A stretch of 64,000 bases of DNA, from IMG/VR virus record IMGVR_UViG_3300028592_000004, positions 165,211 through 229,210 of that record. One strand, 5' to 3'. The position numbers and the translations under genes are program-made. Under the pieces are notes generated by a model that was not told the origin of the DNA, ran no database searches, and saw only the letters and a program-made list of their open reading frames with translations. This document shows, piece by piece, positions 31,283-62,409 of the stretch. The stretch's first letter is position 1. The number at the start of each line of letters is the position of its first letter.

Positions 31283-31287
31283 GTAAG

Positions 31288-31431
31288 TGACGATGCCAGG
31301 AATCGAACCTAGTGAGCAGGCCACATTGGCAGTACCTCCCGCCGCTCTGCATGCGAGCGGACAGTCCCTTCCACCGTTGGCTGATCTGCACTGGCCATAC
31401 ACCAGTCCCTCTGCCATTGAGGATCATCGTC
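31288..31431 (-). ncRNA. tRNA-like RNA (144 nt) with ~70-nt insertion in the variable region
   Basis: Acceptor GACGATG/CATCGTC, D arm CCTC/GAGG, stem ACTGG/CCAGT with loop TGTATGG, T arm CTAGG-TTCGATT-CCTGG. Confidence 0.65.
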
Positions 31432-36375: not shown

Positions 36376-36852
36376 TCAGGCCGCTTCCTGAATTGCGACC
36401 TGACCGTAGTAGGCCACCGACTTTCGGGTCAGGCCCTGGTCCGCCATGTCACGAAGCATCTCGCTGTTCATCCAGCGGAGTTCGAGGTGCTCGTCCGACA
36501 GCCGCGGCGGCTGATCCGGATTCTTCGGCTTTGCAACATAGATCAGACACTGATGTGAGTGCGTCGGCGTGATCGGATGAACGTCGACGAACCGCGGTCT
36601 GGGCATCGGGGTGATGTCCGGTTCCAGCTGAGGCGGCACCTCGGCCAGGATCTCGACTTCGAGCCCGGTCTCTTCGTCAGTCTCGCGATGGAGTGCGGCG
36701 AGGACTGTCTCGTTGATTTCGATATGACCGCCGATCGGCAGCCACAGGCCGATCTTCTTGTGGTGGCACATCAGGACTTGGCCGTGCATAACGATGTAGA
36801 GGGCAACGGTCCAGTCGAGAGCGTAAAAGATGTGGGGCAACGTGGTCTCCAA
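36376..36852 (-). CDS. NUDIX hydrolase
   Basis: GGHIEINETVLAALHRETDEETGL Nudix box. Confidence 0.9.
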   Translation of the reverse strand: METTLPHIFYALDWTVALYIVMHGQVLMCHHKKIGLWLPIGGHIEINETVLAALHRETDEETGLEVEILAEVPPQLEPDITPMPRPRFVDVHPITPTHSHQCLIYVAKPKNPDQPPRLSDEHLELRWMNSEMLRDMADQGLTRKSVAYYGQVAIQEAA

Positions 36853-36904: not shown

Positions 36905-38530
36905 CTACTTCACGAAGCTCGCCATCACGGCAGGAACGTCGGCCGACGCGCCGACGATGTCGAGCTGACCGGCATCCTTCGGGTCAGCGACCGAGAACCG
37001 CGTGGCCGTCAAAGCACACACGATGAGTTTGGCCGGACGGTTCATCTGCTCGCGGTACATCTGCAGGGCCTGGGAGGCGTGGATCTGCCCCGCCCAGCTC
37101 TCGTTGTCCGTGTAGATGACGAAGACGTCGACCTCGATCTTGTGGGCCAGAGCGTACAACATCGGCAGGGCGCAGTCGGTCCCACCGAAGTTGAGCTTCC
37201 GCATCTCAGCGATCGCTGTCGGAATCGTGTCCCGGACGCCAATCGCCAACGGCGTCACCGCCGCAGTGTCGTACCGGCCGTTACGACCCGCCGTGAAGGC
37301 AACGACATGCGTCTCCTCTTCCGTCCGGATCGGGATCAGAGCCAGAGCCGTCGCCGCCTCCGCCGCCGAGAGACCGGGCACGCTCGCGACGTGGCTACTG
37401 TGCATACTCCCGCTGACGTCGACGCCGAGCAGGTACTTCTTGTTCGTCGGCTCCAGGTACTGGAAGGCCTTGTAGAAGCCGTCGTCGAGGGCGGAGATGA
37501 TCCGTTGATCGACGTTCCAGGTCAGGGACCCCTTCACACCCTTACCGTTCGCGTAGACCTTCGAAGCGAGCAGAAGAGCGAACGGGTGGACCCGTTCCTT
37601 CTTCAGCCGATCCGGGTTGGTCAAGGCGTTCGTGACGAACCTGGTCGTGCTCGACAACGGCTTGATGAGGTCGATGGACGTCATCTTGCCGAGGTTTCGC
37701 ACCATCGCCGTCAGCCCCATGTGCGGCAGGAGGGCCTCCCACACCTTCGGCTCGTTGAGGTACTCGGTCGGGATCGCTTCCCGCGGCAGCTGGTACGTCT
37801 CGATCGCCTTGATGATCTCCTTGGCCGACGTCGCCGCCTTCGCAGCTTCGAAGCCCAGAATCGCGGGAGCCTCGCTGCCGGCACGGCCGTGGGCGATCCA
37901 GTCGAACACCTTGCCGTGCGGACTGTCGGAAGGCACCTTCGGCTTCGACAGCCGGAGGACGTCGCGATGGGACCACGCCTTGCCGCCTTCCGAGACGACT
38001 CGCGACTGATACTTGACGGCCTGATAGGCAGCCTGATCCGCCGGCCGGCTGAGATACCAATTCTGAATGGCACGCTTGAGGCCGCGACCCCAGCCCCGGA
38101 ACTGCTCGACGGCATCGACGAACTGGAACAGGTGATAGCCCGTCCGGCAGATGTCGTTCAACGCAGCGAGGGCCTGCTGACCGAGCTCTTCCTTCTGGCC
38201 GGCGAGGTACGCCAGGACGAAGACCGCCTGGTCGTTCTTCGGCGCCAGGGCTTCGAGGCTGATCCGGCGGGTCATTTCGAGGACACGCTTGGCGTCCTCC
38301 TGCACGCACTTGGCCAGGACGGCGATGCTGTCCTGCGTCATCTTCTGTTCGGTGACGTAGTACGATCCGCCCATCGTGCCGAGGATCAGGAAGCGTTCAA
38401 GCTGCTTCCAGTGATCAACGACGAACGAGAAGCCGCCAGCGTTGTTTTTCTCCATCGGCTTGCCGGGGATCGGCTGCGACTGCGGAGTCTGACGGGTGGA
38501 AGCCGAACGTGCGTAGCGTGACGCGTTCAT
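36905..38530 (-). CDS. rsr: Ro60-related TROVE + vWA domain RNA-binding protein
   Basis: NNAGG, RFLILG, GWGR, KYQSR, SHRDVLRL, DVSGSM (MIDAS), GGTDC, YTDNE. Confidence 0.95.
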   Translation of the reverse strand: MNASRYARSASTRQTPQSQPIPGKPMEKNNAGGFSFVVDHWKQLERFLILGTMGGSYYVTEQKMTQDSIAVLAKCVQEDAKRVLEMTRRISLEALAPKNDQAVFVLAYLAGQKEELGQQALAALNDICRTGYHLFQFVDAVEQFRGWGRGLKRAIQNWYLSRPADQAAYQAVKYQSRVVSEGGKAWSHRDVLRLSKPKVPSDSPHGKVFDWIAHGRAGSEAPAILGFEAAKAATSAKEIIKAIETYQLPREAIPTEYLNEPKVWEALLPHMGLTAMVRNLGKMTSIDLIKPLSSTTRFVTNALTNPDRLKKERVHPFALLLASKVYANGKGVKGSLTWNVDQRIISALDDGFYKAFQYLEPTNKKYLLGVDVSGSMHSSHVASVPGLSAAEAATALALIPIRTEEETHVVAFTAGRNGRYDTAAVTPLAIGVRDTIPTAIAEMRKLNFGGTDCALPMLYALAHKIEVDVFVIYTDNESWAGQIHASQALQMYREQMNRPAKLIVCALTATRFSVADPKDAGQLDIVGASADVPAVMASFVK

Positions 38531-38607
38531 GGGAAGCCTTTCCTACAAAAGAAAACGCCGAACAGGATGCTCGGCGTGAGTGGTCAGCGAGGCCCGCTGA
38601 AAGAATC

Positions 38608-38740
38608 CGTGAACATGGGGCTGATGTCCCTGTTTGACGTGTGCTATCTACTACACTACGGCCCCGTGAAAGAGGGGCCGCTGGGAGTTGCACCCAGGCT
38701 ACGCGATTGGAAATCGATAAGGAACGTCATTCGGCTCACG
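38608..38740 (-). ncRNA. Y RNA-like 1 (YrlA type, with permuted tRNA domain)
   Basis: Terminal helix CGTGAGCCGA/ATGTTCACG; internal T arm, loop-closed acceptor stem, D arm. Confidence 0.8.
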
Positions 38741-38748
38741 AATGCGAA

Positions 38749-38881
38749 ATCACGAACATGGAAGTTGGCATCCAGTCAATTCTTGTGCTCTACCGCTGAG
38801 CTACAGCGCCTTTCGACGCCGACTGGATTTGAACCAGTGACCCCAAGATCCGATGAGAACAGATACCGATCGGCTCGTGAT
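38749..38881 (-). ncRNA. Y RNA-like 2 (YrlA type)
   Basis: ATCACGAGCCGA/ATGTTCGTGAT helix; GGTTCAAATCC T arm, then TAGCTCAGCGGTAGAGC D arm. Confidence 0.82.
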
Positions 38882-38888
38882 GTTTTGA

Positions 38889-38955
38889 ACTGCGAACATG
38901 GAAGTCGTCGAGGGAGTCATCTTAACAGGATAACCCTCAGCATTCGGCTCGCAGT
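38889..38955 (-). ncRNA. Y RNA-like 3 (short, no tRNA domain)
   Basis: ACTGCGAGCCGA/ATGTTCGCAGT helix, shared GTTATC motif. Confidence 0.7.
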
Positions 38956-38963
38956 GTCTGGAG

Positions 38964-39091
38964 CCGTGAACATGAAATTGCAAGTCCGCGTTTTGGTCTC
39001 GTGCTCTACCGATTGAGCTACATGGGCTTCCGCCCCTGGACGGATTCGAACCGCCAACCTCAAGAGATAACGAACTAACTTCGGCTCACGG
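38964..39091 (-). ncRNA. Y RNA-like 4 (YrlA type)
   Basis: CCGTGAGCCGA/ATGTTCACGG helix; GGTTCGAATCC T arm, then TAGCTCAATCGGTAGAGC D arm. Confidence 0.82.
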
Positions 39092-39100
39092 TGTATTGAA

Positions 39101-39176
39101 CCCGAACGTGGGACCAACAGAAGGCGTTTTGGGCTCCGGTTGGGGAGCAAAGGTAACCGTCTGTCTTCGGCTCGGG
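39101..39176 (-). ncRNA. Y RNA-like 5 (short, no tRNA domain)
   Basis: CCCGAGCCGA/ACGTTCGGG helix, GTTACC motif. Confidence 0.7.
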
Positions 39177-39180
39177 AAGG

Positions 39181-39278
39181 CGGGCGATGGAGGAATCGAA
39201 CCTTCGGTAACGATCATCAGTCGGCTCGTTTCCGAGCATGGAATTGACAATCGGTTGCACACCAACGTGCGATCGCCC
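39181..39278 (-). ncRNA. tRNA-shaped RNA with the Ro-binding-like helix in place of the anticodon arm (permuted Y RNA)
   Basis: Acceptor GGGCGAT/ATCGCCC, T arm GAAGG-TTCGATT-CCTCC, internal ATGCTCG-GAAA-CGAGCCGA. Confidence 0.68.
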
Positions 39279-39545
39279 AGTTGGACGGAGTCTACCGACT
39301 CCGTCCTTGATTGCAAGACCAGACACGCGGTCTAGGTCGTCGGTTCACCCTCGGCGGGCGGATTCGAAGCCGGATCCTTGGCCGGATCCCGCAGCAAGTT
39401 CGGAGGCATCACCATGTACATCCCCATCGGAGAGGTGCAGGCCACGACGATTTGCCCCGAGAAGGCAATGAGAAAAATGTCCACAACGTACCGCACGAAA
39501 TTGCGCAACATGGAACATCTCCGGACAGACGAGCTTGTCCGCGGC

Positions 39546-62305: not shown

Positions 62306-62335
62306 TGTGAGGTCCTCCTTCTGAAATGAACCCTG

Positions 62336-62409
62336 TGTCGGGGGCGGGATTCGAACCCGCAACCAACGGATTTGAAGTCCGGTGCTCTAACCATTTGAGC
62401 CACCCCGAC
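62336..62409 (-). tRNA. tRNA with UCA anticodon (opal suppressor; not tRNA-Sec)
   Basis: Acceptor GTCGGGG/CCCCGAC+A73, D arm GCTC/GAGC, loop CT-TCA-AA, short variable loop, T arm GCGGG-TTCGAAT-CCCGC. Confidence 0.9.

What the first reader, a model, noticed from the sequence alone, without database searches (positions are those of the whole stretch)
39181..39278. Circularly permuted Y RNA: tRNA-type ends with the Ro-binding helix replacing the anticodon arm
Seen: open acceptor stem GGGCGAT/ATCGCCC and a normal T arm. The two strands of the Ro-like helix occur in reversed order and are joined by a GAAA loop (ATGCTCG-GAAA-CGAGCCGA). This is a circular permutation of units 1, 2 and 4. Inference: it could be processed like a tRNA and perhaps CCA-tailed or aminoacylated while bound to Ro60, and may represent an intermediate between tRNA and YrlA.
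Basis: partly seen in the sequence, partly recalled or inferred. Interest (0 to 1): 0.72.

Follow-up and report, generated by a model that had tools for sequence, protein, structure and literature searches.

The report
tRNA-shaped Y RNA beside phage Ro60
A jumbo phage carries, ahead of its Ro60 gene, a 98-base RNA gene built like a tRNA whose anticodon arm is replaced by a hairpin version of the Ro60-binding helix. The same design turns up in dozens of other Ro60 loci, and I found no description of it.

Summary
On the minus strand, 39278-39181 has a perfect 7-bp open acceptor stem, a D arm, a T arm with a canonical T loop, and a long arm in the anticodon position. In that arm the two strands of the Ro60-binding helix run in reversed order, closed by GAAA.

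It is the first of six Y-RNA units directly upstream of a full-length Ro60 (rsr) gene in a 229-kb phage record. Three neighbours (B, D, E) have the published YrlA order: ends in the Ro helix, closed acceptor hairpin. The element is their circular permutation.

It is not a one-off. A covariance model built without it, from similar RNAs beside other Ro60 genes, matches it end to end (40.7 bits, E about 1e-9). At least 56 clear cases occur in 80 bacterial Ro60 loci and about 25 in 80 viral ones, with covariation in every helix. Some encode CCA.

Most likely it is a Ro60-bound Y RNA matured by tRNA enzymes, which also cut the neighbouring unit free. Neither expression nor Ro60 binding could be tested, and nothing supports aminoacylation. 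I found only the permuted YrlA form in the literature, but two key papers were not available.

The parts
39181..39278 (-). Element P, a tRNA-topology Y RNA. In order: acceptor 5' strand, D arm, long arm holding the Ro-helix hairpin, 5-nt variable loop, T arm, acceptor 3' strand, discriminator G39181.
   Evidence: R1 scores 40.7 bits, E about 1e-9. ARAGORN calls it only with the intron option. Rfam tRNA scores 19.1 bits, below the 29-bit cut-off.
39218..39244 (-). Ro60-binding-type helix as a hairpin: AUUCCAU-GCUCG, GAAA, CGAGC-C-GACUG. The CUUG-type strand comes first and the GNCG-type strand second.
   Evidence: Both strands match those of units A-E. The CAUG variant replaces the class consensus CUUG in B-E and P; unit A has CACG.
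39177..39180 (-). CCUU, the 4-nt link between the discriminator and the first base of unit A. CC stands where C74 and C75 would be.
39283..39306 (-). Perfect 10-bp hairpin, GGACGGAGUC-GGUA-GACUCCGUCC, 4 nt upstream of P in the leader. Role unknown.
39101..39176 (-). Unit A, a short Y RNA in normal topology. Ends CCCGAGC-C-GAAG and CACGUUCGGG.
   Evidence: Fold -28.5 kcal/mol, z = -3.46.
38964..39091 (-). Unit B, YrlA-like with a closed acceptor hairpin.
   Evidence: Rfam YrlA 37 bits, E 8e-6, over all 114 model positions. Fold.
38890..38954 (-). Unit C, a short Y RNA.
   Evidence: Fold z = -3.47.
38749..38881 (-). Unit D, YrlA-like. Its closed acceptor hairpin is CGGCGUC-GAAA-GGCGCUG, 7 bp.
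   Evidence: Rfam YrlA 32.3 bits, partial match..
38608..38740 (-). Unit E, YrlA-like. Its closed acceptor hairpin has 7 Watson-Crick pairs.
38547..38577 (-). Terminator-like hairpin with a U tract, between the array and rsr.
36905..38530 (-). rsr, a Ro60 orthologue of 541 aa.
   Evidence: Pfam TROVE 8e-38 and vWA_Ro60 1e-56. PDB 2NVO E 3e-104 and 1YVP E 3e-95.

Best explanation
P is a Y RNA with the connectivity of a tRNA.

What it is. Its 5' and 3' ends form a 7-bp acceptor stem. Its D and T arms can form a tRNA elbow. In place of the anticodon stem-loop it has a roughly 17-bp arm, whose outer part is the bulged-C GNCG / (C/U)AUG helix that Ro60 recognises, capped by a GAAA loop.

How it probably works (inferred):
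1. P is transcribed with five further Y RNAs (A-E) as one precursor upstream of the phage rsr gene.
2. Host RNase P cuts before G39278.
3. A 3' tRNA-processing activity cuts or trims after G39181 or C39179. This also creates the 5' end of unit A, 4 nt downstream.
4. The host CCA-adding enzyme completes the encoded G-C-C to GCCA. The phage record encodes no such enzyme.
5. Phage Ro60 binds the hairpin helix. The exposed tRNA-like body offers the same effector-binding surface as in YrlA, but with a free tRNA-type 3' end.

Shown: the architecture, membership of a covarying class, and linkage to rsr. Inferred: transcription, processing, CCA addition, Ro60 binding and any effector.
For: Architecture and energetics.

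Independent model match: R1 was built without P and matches it at 40.7 bits, E about 1e-9. By inspection of that match against the A2 column list, P appears to keep the invariant positions in the Ro module (UG, G..CCG, the U and C of the GUUA(U/C)C motif), G10 and the T loop.

Class covariation:
- 47 seeds: 92.2% of cells paired against 73% in shuffles and 38-52% in slid controls.
- 69 bacterial hits: 93.8% against 75% in shuffles and 36-51% in slid controls.
- All 7 acceptor pairs and the long stem covary.
- 54 of the 69 have 7 of 7 acceptor pairs, and 56 pair better open than in any closed alternative.

Linkage to rsr:
- P lies about 650 nt upstream of rsr, on the same strand.
- The phage has no other R1 hit outside this window.
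- In the four of five searched bacterial genomes that had hits, 11 of the 13 top hits lie at the rsr locus.
- 103 of 104 ARAGORN intron-type calls of 90-200 nt lie on the Ro60 strand.

Shared signature: P carries the lineage-specific CAUG variant found in units B-E (A has CACG), which fits one shared protein partner.

tRNA-type maturation:
- U at -1 and G-C-C after the stem.
- CCA encoded in 17 of 138 class members.
- M. smegmatis YrlA is cut by RNase P and gains CCA in vivo (PMC4201824).

Short P-like forms of 98-99 nt lie about 150 nt upstream of Ro60 in L036 and L020.
Against: - No expression data. No RNA run was listed for the phage or for a cultured carrier.
- No binding data. The complex predictor did not fold the pair.
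- P is a divergent member: 40.7 bits against 80-110 for typical ones. It lacks U8 and A14, has one A.C in the T stem, and its motif is GCCGACUG, not GNCGAAN0-1G.
- A tetraloop 5 bp from the bulged C might hinder Ro60, which is reported to pry the Y RNA stem apart (PMC12135203).
- Only 12% of class members encode CCA, against 37% of nearby tRNAs.
- The seeds were chosen with tools that demand paired acceptor, D, T and closing stems. This inflates the pairing figures for those helices, though not for the long stem.
- The three copies of the phage locus are identical, so P's own lineage offers no covariation.
Confidence: 0.65

Rival explanations
1. P is mainly a processing signal. It would be a tRNA-like 'punctuation mark' that recruits RNase P and 3' tRNA nucleases to cut the polycistronic Y-RNA precursor and define the 5' end of unit A. 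The released tRNA-like piece would have no role with Ro60.
For: P sits at the 5' end of the array and abuts unit A with only 4 nt between them. In L050, a short Y RNA lies between two tRNA-topology elements.
Against: Punctuation needs no Ro-helix hairpin. Yet both strands of that helix are among the most conserved positions of the class (invariant UG and G..C.G), and P keeps them.
Confidence: 0.15
2. P is a non-functional chimera. A deletion or unequal crossover between two closed YrlA-like units would have left the 3' half of one fused to the 5' half of the next.
For: In tandem arrays the junction of two closed units can mimic the open form. The D/E junction (38810-38672) scores 60.9 bits with R1, and about 8 of the 69 bacterial hits are such cross-unit reads.
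Against: - P has 7 of 7 acceptor pairs, a 9-bp stem and a 5-bp stem capped by a GNRA loop, with no decay.
- It has no T arm upstream and no D arm downstream that could close it. The best closed alternative scores 4, against 7 for the open stem.
- The same compact form occurs in unrelated phage contigs (L020, L036).
- The sequence is identical in three samples.
Confidence: 0.08
3. P is a decoding tRNA gene with an insertion. ARAGORN reads it as tRNA-Asp(GUC) with an 8-nt intron and a long variable arm.
For: ARAGORN with the intron option calls it. Rfam tRNA aligns it end to end.
Against: - That cloverleaf is 11 kcal/mol worse and needs a 15-nt anticodon loop.
- Rfam tRNA scores 19.1 bits, below the 29-bit cut-off, with E 1.5.
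- ARAGORN without the intron option finds nothing.
- The inserted sequence is the Ro-helix motif shared with five neighbours.
Confidence: 0.02

Closest known systems
YrlA (Rfam RF02553; Chen et al. 2014, PMC4201824; structure paper, bioRxiv 10.1101/312249)
   Same: Encoded beside rsr on the same strand. It has a Ro60-binding bulged helix with a GNCG-type motif, a GUUA(U/C)C-like segment, T and D arms that can form a tRNA elbow, and an acceptor-like stem. Units B, D and E of this same array are of this type.
   Different: In YrlA the RNA ends lie in the Ro helix, the acceptor stem is a closed hairpin, and the T arm precedes the D arm, so it is 'a circularly permuted tRNA'. In P the ends lie in the acceptor stem, the Ro helix is the closed hairpin, and the D arm precedes the T arm. 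The Rfam YrlA model gives no match to P even at E up to 10.
Mycobacterium smegmatis YrlA after RNase P cleavage (PMC4201824)
   Same: A 7-bp acceptor stem with open ends, and a 3' end that receives CCA while the RNA stays bound to Rsr.
   Different: There the open acceptor arises by cutting a closed precursor, which gives a two-piece RNA with four ends. P would be a single chain made directly in tRNA order.
Deinococcus radiodurans Yrn1 (PMC4201824)
   Same: A Y RNA with D-like then T-like arms in tRNA order.
   Different: As described, the Ro helix of Yrn1 is formed by the RNA ends, and the stem-loop between the arms takes the anticodon position. P is the reverse.
b7a-tRNA (Burroughs and Aravind 2016, known here only through 10.1101/312249)
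   Same: A predicted tRNA-like RNA 'occasionally encoded adjacent to Rsr'.
   Different: It is described as strongly resembling an authentic tRNA and as the partner of a Band-7 protein. No Ro-binding helix is mentioned. The original paper was not available, so some overlap with the class found here cannot be excluded.
One-piece versus two-piece (circularly permuted) tmRNA genes, and permuted tRNA genes of red algae (the latter cited in 10.1101/312249)
   Same: One tRNA-like fold is encoded in two cyclic orders in different lineages.
   Different: These are different RNAs with different partners. The tmRNA case is cited from my own knowledge.
Metazoan Y RNAs and nematode sbRNAs (Rfam RF01656)
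   Same: The same bulged helix. The short Y RNAs in related loci reach RF01656's gathering score.
   Different: They have no tRNA-like module, and their ends lie in the Ro helix.

Membership tests
YrlA (RF02553) | Reaches the Rfam covariance-model gathering score (69 bits) | tested here: not met
   No YrlA match on 39181-39278 even at E up to 10. Neighbours B and D score 37 and 32 bits.
YrlA (RF02553) | Module order: Ro strand, T arm, closed acceptor hairpin, D arm, Ro strand, with the RNA ends in the Ro helix | tested here: not met
   P runs acceptor strand, D arm, Ro hairpin, T arm, acceptor strand.
YrlA (RF02553) | GNCGAAN0-1G motif in a bulged helix (PMC4201824) | tested here: inconclusive
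   P has GCCGACUG, so GNCGA is kept and the second A is C. Unit D has GCCGAUCG. The class consensus keeps only GNCG.
YrlA (RF02553) | Encoded within 4 kb of rsr | tested here: met
   About 650 nt upstream of rsr (36905-38530), same strand.
YrlA / Y RNA in general | Binds Ro60 | not testable with these tools
   The complex predictor did not fold the pair.
tRNA (RF00005) | Reaches the Rfam gathering score (29 bits), or is called by ARAGORN with default settings | tested here: not met
   19.1 bits, E 1.5. ARAGORN with default settings finds nothing.
tRNA (RF00005) | 7-bp acceptor stem, D arm with GG, T arm with a UUCRA loop | tested here: met
   There is one A.C in the T stem. U8 and A14 are absent.
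tRNA (RF00005) | 5-bp anticodon stem with a 7-nt loop | tested here: not met
   Replaced by a 9-bp stem, an internal loop and a 5-bp stem with GAAA. The cloverleaf alternative is 11 kcal/mol worse.
tRNA-topology Y RNA class (model R1, defined here) | Full-length match to a model built without the window's sequence | tested here: met
   40.7 bits, E about 1e-9, positions 1-124 of 124.
tRNA-topology Y RNA class (model R1) | The open acceptor stem pairs better than any closed alternative with flanking sequence | tested here: met
   Pairing score 7 open (7 of 7 pairs) against at most 4 closed. The D/E junction, by contrast, pairs better closed.
tRNA-topology Y RNA class (model R1) | Invariant positions of the Ro module: UG before the closing stem, G..CCG after it, and the U and C of GUUA(U/C)C | tested here: met
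   Read by eye from the R1 match against the invariant columns of A2.
b7a-tRNA | Linked to a Band-7 protein and RtcB | not tested
   The defining paper was not held. The phage record has no RtcB.

The most novel reading that the evidence does not exclude
Ro60 genes of many bacteria and phages come with an undescribed second architecture of Y RNA. It is a true tRNA-order molecule with a free, CCA-bearing acceptor end and a Ro60-binding hairpin where the anticodon should be.

This form would be the ancestral link between tRNA and YrlA, with tandem copies re-cut one half-unit out of register giving the permuted YrlA. Because of its free CCA end it could engage tRNA-specific enzymes (CCA-adding enzyme, perhaps synthetases or tRNA-targeting nucleases) while tethered to Ro60. 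In a phage that might make it a decoy or sensor for attacks on tRNA.
Probability: 0.3. Interest if true: 0.85.

Novelty: new variant of a known kind. Interest (0 to 1): 0.7.

Why it matters
Bacterial Y RNAs are known as tRNA mimics, but only in a permuted form with a closed acceptor stem. That form is thought to exclude a free CCA end in most species.

A widespread tRNA-order form has three consequences:
1. It gives a concrete, testable route for the origin of YrlA: tRNA, then tRNA with a Ro hairpin, then tandem copies, then the permuted form. The published alternative is the dimeric-tRNA model.
2. It predicts that tRNA-processing enzymes punctuate Y-RNA arrays.
3. It reopens the question of whether some Ro60-bound RNAs carry CCA or even an amino acid.

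It also matters for annotation. Typical members pass Rfam's tRNA threshold at 40-59 bits, so they are probably being annotated as odd tRNAs.

Two cultured carriers appear among the hits, Desulfonema magnum and two Polyangium strains. That makes experiments possible.

Tried and rejected
- RNA-seq evidence: no RNA run was listed for the phage array or for the Desulfonema magnum locus.
- Complex prediction of Ro60 with P: the job was not folded and is not evidence either way.
- Close relatives for covariation in P's own lineage: the two other contigs carrying the same Ro60 are identical over 4.6 kb. There was no match in the GenBank phage collection. The nearest Ro60 proteins are only about 50% identical.
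None of the 80 fetched loci matched R1, so those are chance hairpins.
- R1 score as a classifier: rejected. True tRNAs score 30-53 bits and the D/E cross-unit junction scores 60.9, above P. I used an explicit open-versus-closed pairing test instead.
- Decoding tRNA with an intron: rejected on energy and on Rfam score.
- Phage-encoded CCA-adding enzyme or RtcB: none found.
- Literature: the 2018 and 2020 Wolin-lab reviews and Burroughs and Aravind 2016 were not held. My statement that the form is undescribed rests on the papers I could search.

Full report
**1. What is at the coordinates**

The gene lies on the minus strand. Read 5' to 3' from 39278 to 39181 it has these parts:
- acceptor 5' strand GGGCGAU;
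- one linker base;
- D arm GCAC-GUUGGU-GUGC;
- three linker bases;
- a 9-bp stem, CGAUUGUCA with UGAUGAUCG;
- inside that stem, AUUCCAU-GCUCG-GAAA-CGAGC-C-GACUG;
- a 5-nt variable loop, UUACC;
- T arm GAAGG-UUCGAUU-CCUCC;
- acceptor 3' strand AUCGCCC, then G, then CC.

The acceptor stem has seven Watson-Crick pairs.

The minimum-energy fold is this structure, at -36.2 kcal/mol with z = -2.78. A cloverleaf with a conventional anticodon arm and a long variable arm is what ARAGORN proposes when introns are allowed (tRNA-Asp GUC). It evaluates to -25.0 against -36.0 kcal/mol. Rfam's tRNA model gives 19.1 bits, below its cut-off, and the YrlA model gives nothing.

**2. Context**

The window is the last 64 kb of a 229,210-bp IMG/VR virus record that CheckV rates complete.

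ORF 36905-38530 (minus strand) is a full-length Ro60:
- Pfam TROVE and vWA_Ro60;
- E 3e-104 to D. radiodurans Rsr (2NVO) and 3e-95 to Xenopus Ro60 (1YVP).

Between a small upstream ORF and rsr lie six RNA units on the same strand:

| Unit | Coordinates | Type |
|---|---|---|
| P | 39278-39181 | tRNA topology (this finding) |
| A | 39176-39101 | short Y RNA |
| B | 39091-38964 | YrlA-like |
| C | 38954-38890 | short Y RNA |
| D | 38881-38749 | YrlA-like |
| E | 38740-38608 | YrlA-like |

A terminator-like hairpin follows at 38577-38547.

Each of A-E begins with ..GAGCCGA.. and ends with ..CAUGUUC.. (CACGUUC in A). The outer part of that helix differs between units but covaries within each unit:
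- A: CCCGAGC / GUUCGGG
- B: CCGUGAGC / GUUCACGG
- C: CUGCGAGC / GUUCGCAG
- D: AUCACGAGC / GUUCGUGAU

This fixes the unit boundaries.

B, D and E then run T arm, closed acceptor hairpin, D arm. That is the published YrlA order (PMC4201824; Rfam YrlA 37 and 32 bits on B and D). P holds the same modules, cyclically shifted. P also carries the CAUG variant of the class-wide CUUG that units B-E of this phage share.

**3. P is one of many**

I aligned Ro60 homologues and used the alignment to fetch 80 viral and 80 bacterial Ro60 loci.

All but one lie on the Ro60 strand.

Their sequences show one design:
- a 7-bp acceptor stem;
- GUAGCUCAGUGGYAGAGC;
- a stem;
- CUUGCCCG, a loop of 3-9 nt, CGGGCCGNNGG;
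- GGUUAUC;
- an optional small hairpin;
- GGUUCGANUCC;
- the acceptor 3' strand.

Covariation on 47 seeds:
- 92.2% of cells pair, against 73% in shuffles and 38-52% when partners are slid.
- All seven acceptor pairs and the long stem covary.

I built model R1 from these seeds without P. Its results:
- It matches P end to end at 40.7 bits, E about 1e-9.
- It finds 69 further hits with E at most 1e-14 in the bacterial loci. All are on the Ro60 strand and at least 104 nt long.
- On those hits, 93.8% of cells pair.

The score alone does not separate the topologies. True tRNAs score 30-53 bits. The junction of closed units D and E scores 60.9, because tandem closed units can be read one half-unit out of register.

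I therefore compared open acceptor pairing with closed alternatives on both flanks:
- 56 of the 69 are clearly open, and 54 of the 69 have 7 of 7 acceptor pairs.
- About 8, mostly from Verrucomicrobiota, are cross-unit reads of closed arrays.

P itself scores 7 open (7 of 7 pairs) against at most 4 closed. A rough census of T arms gives 138 open and 42 closed. The open form is present in 24 of 61 viral and 46 of 79 bacterial loci that have T arms.

Compact members without the extra hairpin exist. Two viral ones of 98-99 nt, L036:2244-2341 and L020:2257-2355, resemble P closely. L020 even shares the same A.C in the T stem.

I searched five whole bacterial genomes. Four had hits. Of the 13 top hits, 11 lie at the rsr locus. 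The other two are in Polyangium, beside urease genes with no TROVE gene within 5 kb. That search scored only 150 candidates per genome.

**4. How it probably works**

Shown:
- the fold and membership of a covarying class;
- position at the head of a Y-RNA array next to rsr;
- U at -1, and G-C-C directly after the acceptor stem, 4 nt before unit A.

Established knowledge:
- A 7-bp acceptor stem stacked on a T arm is the substrate determinant for RNase P.
- M. smegmatis YrlA, the one YrlA with a 7-bp acceptor stem, is cut by RNase P and receives CCA in vivo while bound to Rsr (PMC4201824).

Inferred:
- Host RNase P and a 3' tRNA-processing activity release P. The same cuts create the 5' end of unit A.
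- The host CCA-adding enzyme completes the 3' end. The phage encodes none, and no RtcB either.
- Ro60 binds the hairpin helix.
- The tRNA-like body serves as the effector-binding module, as proposed for YrlA (10.1101/312249).

Class-level support for a tRNA-like 3' end is that 17 of 138 open elements encode CCA after the discriminator. That is well above chance but below the 176 of 481 seen in neighbouring tRNA genes.

Nothing points to aminoacylation. No identity element is conserved.

**5. Comparison with what is known**

The published papers I could read describe only the permuted form. [quoted passage not shown] They propose an origin from dimeric tRNA transcripts (10.1101/312249).

[quoted passage not shown] That step could have removed tRNA-order elements.

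Typical class members pass Rfam's tRNA threshold at 40-59 bits, with a long insert, and none hits YrlA.

The closest things to the class are:
- the RNase P-cleaved two-piece YrlA of M. smegmatis;
- 'b7a-tRNA', a predicted tRNA-like RNA occasionally found next to Rsr. I could not read the defining paper, so overlap with it is an open caveat.

P fails the YrlA membership tests on order and on score, but it very probably works like a Y RNA.

**6. Evolutionary reading (inference)**

Tandem copies of either form contain the other form across their junction. Two observations show this: the 60.9-bit D/E junction here, and adjacent open elements separated by 7 nt in L014 and L021. Duplication followed by a shift of the ends is therefore a simple route between the two forms. 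The direction is not established.

**7. Limits**

- There are no RNA data, no binding test and no variation within P's own lineage.
- The seeds were chosen with pairing-dependent tools.
- The literature check is incomplete.

**8. Verdict**

The structural interpretation is supported and generalised. The functional inferences remain plausible and untested. I rate it a new variant of a known kind, with interest 0.7.

Noticed in passing
window 31287-31431 (-): A 145-nt tRNA-like gene inside the phage tRNA cluster. It has a 7-bp acceptor stem, D arm, an anticodon-like stem-loop (loop UGUAUGG), an extra arm of about 70 nt, and a T arm. R1 scores 28.6 bits. ARAGORN does not call it.
   Followed up: partly
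window 62335-62409 (-): A well-formed 75-nt tRNA with a UCA anticodon (Rfam tRNA 73.9 bits). ARAGORN labels it tRNA-SeC, but it looks like a possible opal-suppressor tRNA.
   Followed up: no
window 38672-38810 (-): The junction of closed units D and E can also be read as a tRNA-order element. It scores 60.9 bits with R1 and 31.9 bits with Rfam tRNA, and its acceptor pairs 6 of 7. The array may have alternative folding registers.
   Followed up: partly
window 39283-39306 (-): A perfect 10-bp hairpin with a GGUA loop lies 4 nt upstream of P, just after the stop of a 59-aa ORF (39511-39332, minus strand). Its role is unknown.
   Followed up: no
window 36376-36852 (-): A NUDIX hydrolase gene lies directly downstream of rsr, followed by an epimerase gene and a PAS-domain gene.
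   Followed up: no
L106:1887-1956, L106:1052-1123, L092:330-398, L088:2341-2434: Short Y RNAs in bacterial Ro60 loci reach the gathering score of Rfam RF01656, the nematode stem-bulge RNAs. These are animal Y-RNA homologues, which underlines how conserved the bulged helix is.
   Followed up: no
alignment A2 (47 loci): GGUUAUC directly after the Ro-helix strand is almost invariant in the class. It also occurs in units B, C and E here. From memory, a similar GUUAUC follows the Ro-binding strand in human Y1 and Y4 RNAs. I did not check this.
   Followed up: no
L091, L135, L149, L137 and other bacterial loci: Many Ro60 genes sit inside large tRNA gene arrays, with 19-22 canonical tRNAs within 2.5 kb on either side.
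   Followed up: no
L285:4933-5057 and L285:5201-5327 (Polyangium sp. 6x1, second locus): Two tRNA-order elements with the hairpin motif lie next to urease genes, far from the genome's Ro60 gene, with no TROVE gene within 5 kb.
   Followed up: partly
P 39201-39205 with 39189-39193; L020:2257-2355: The same T stem, GAAGG/CCUCC, with an A.C mismatch at the second pair, occurs in P and in an unrelated viral short form.
   Followed up: no
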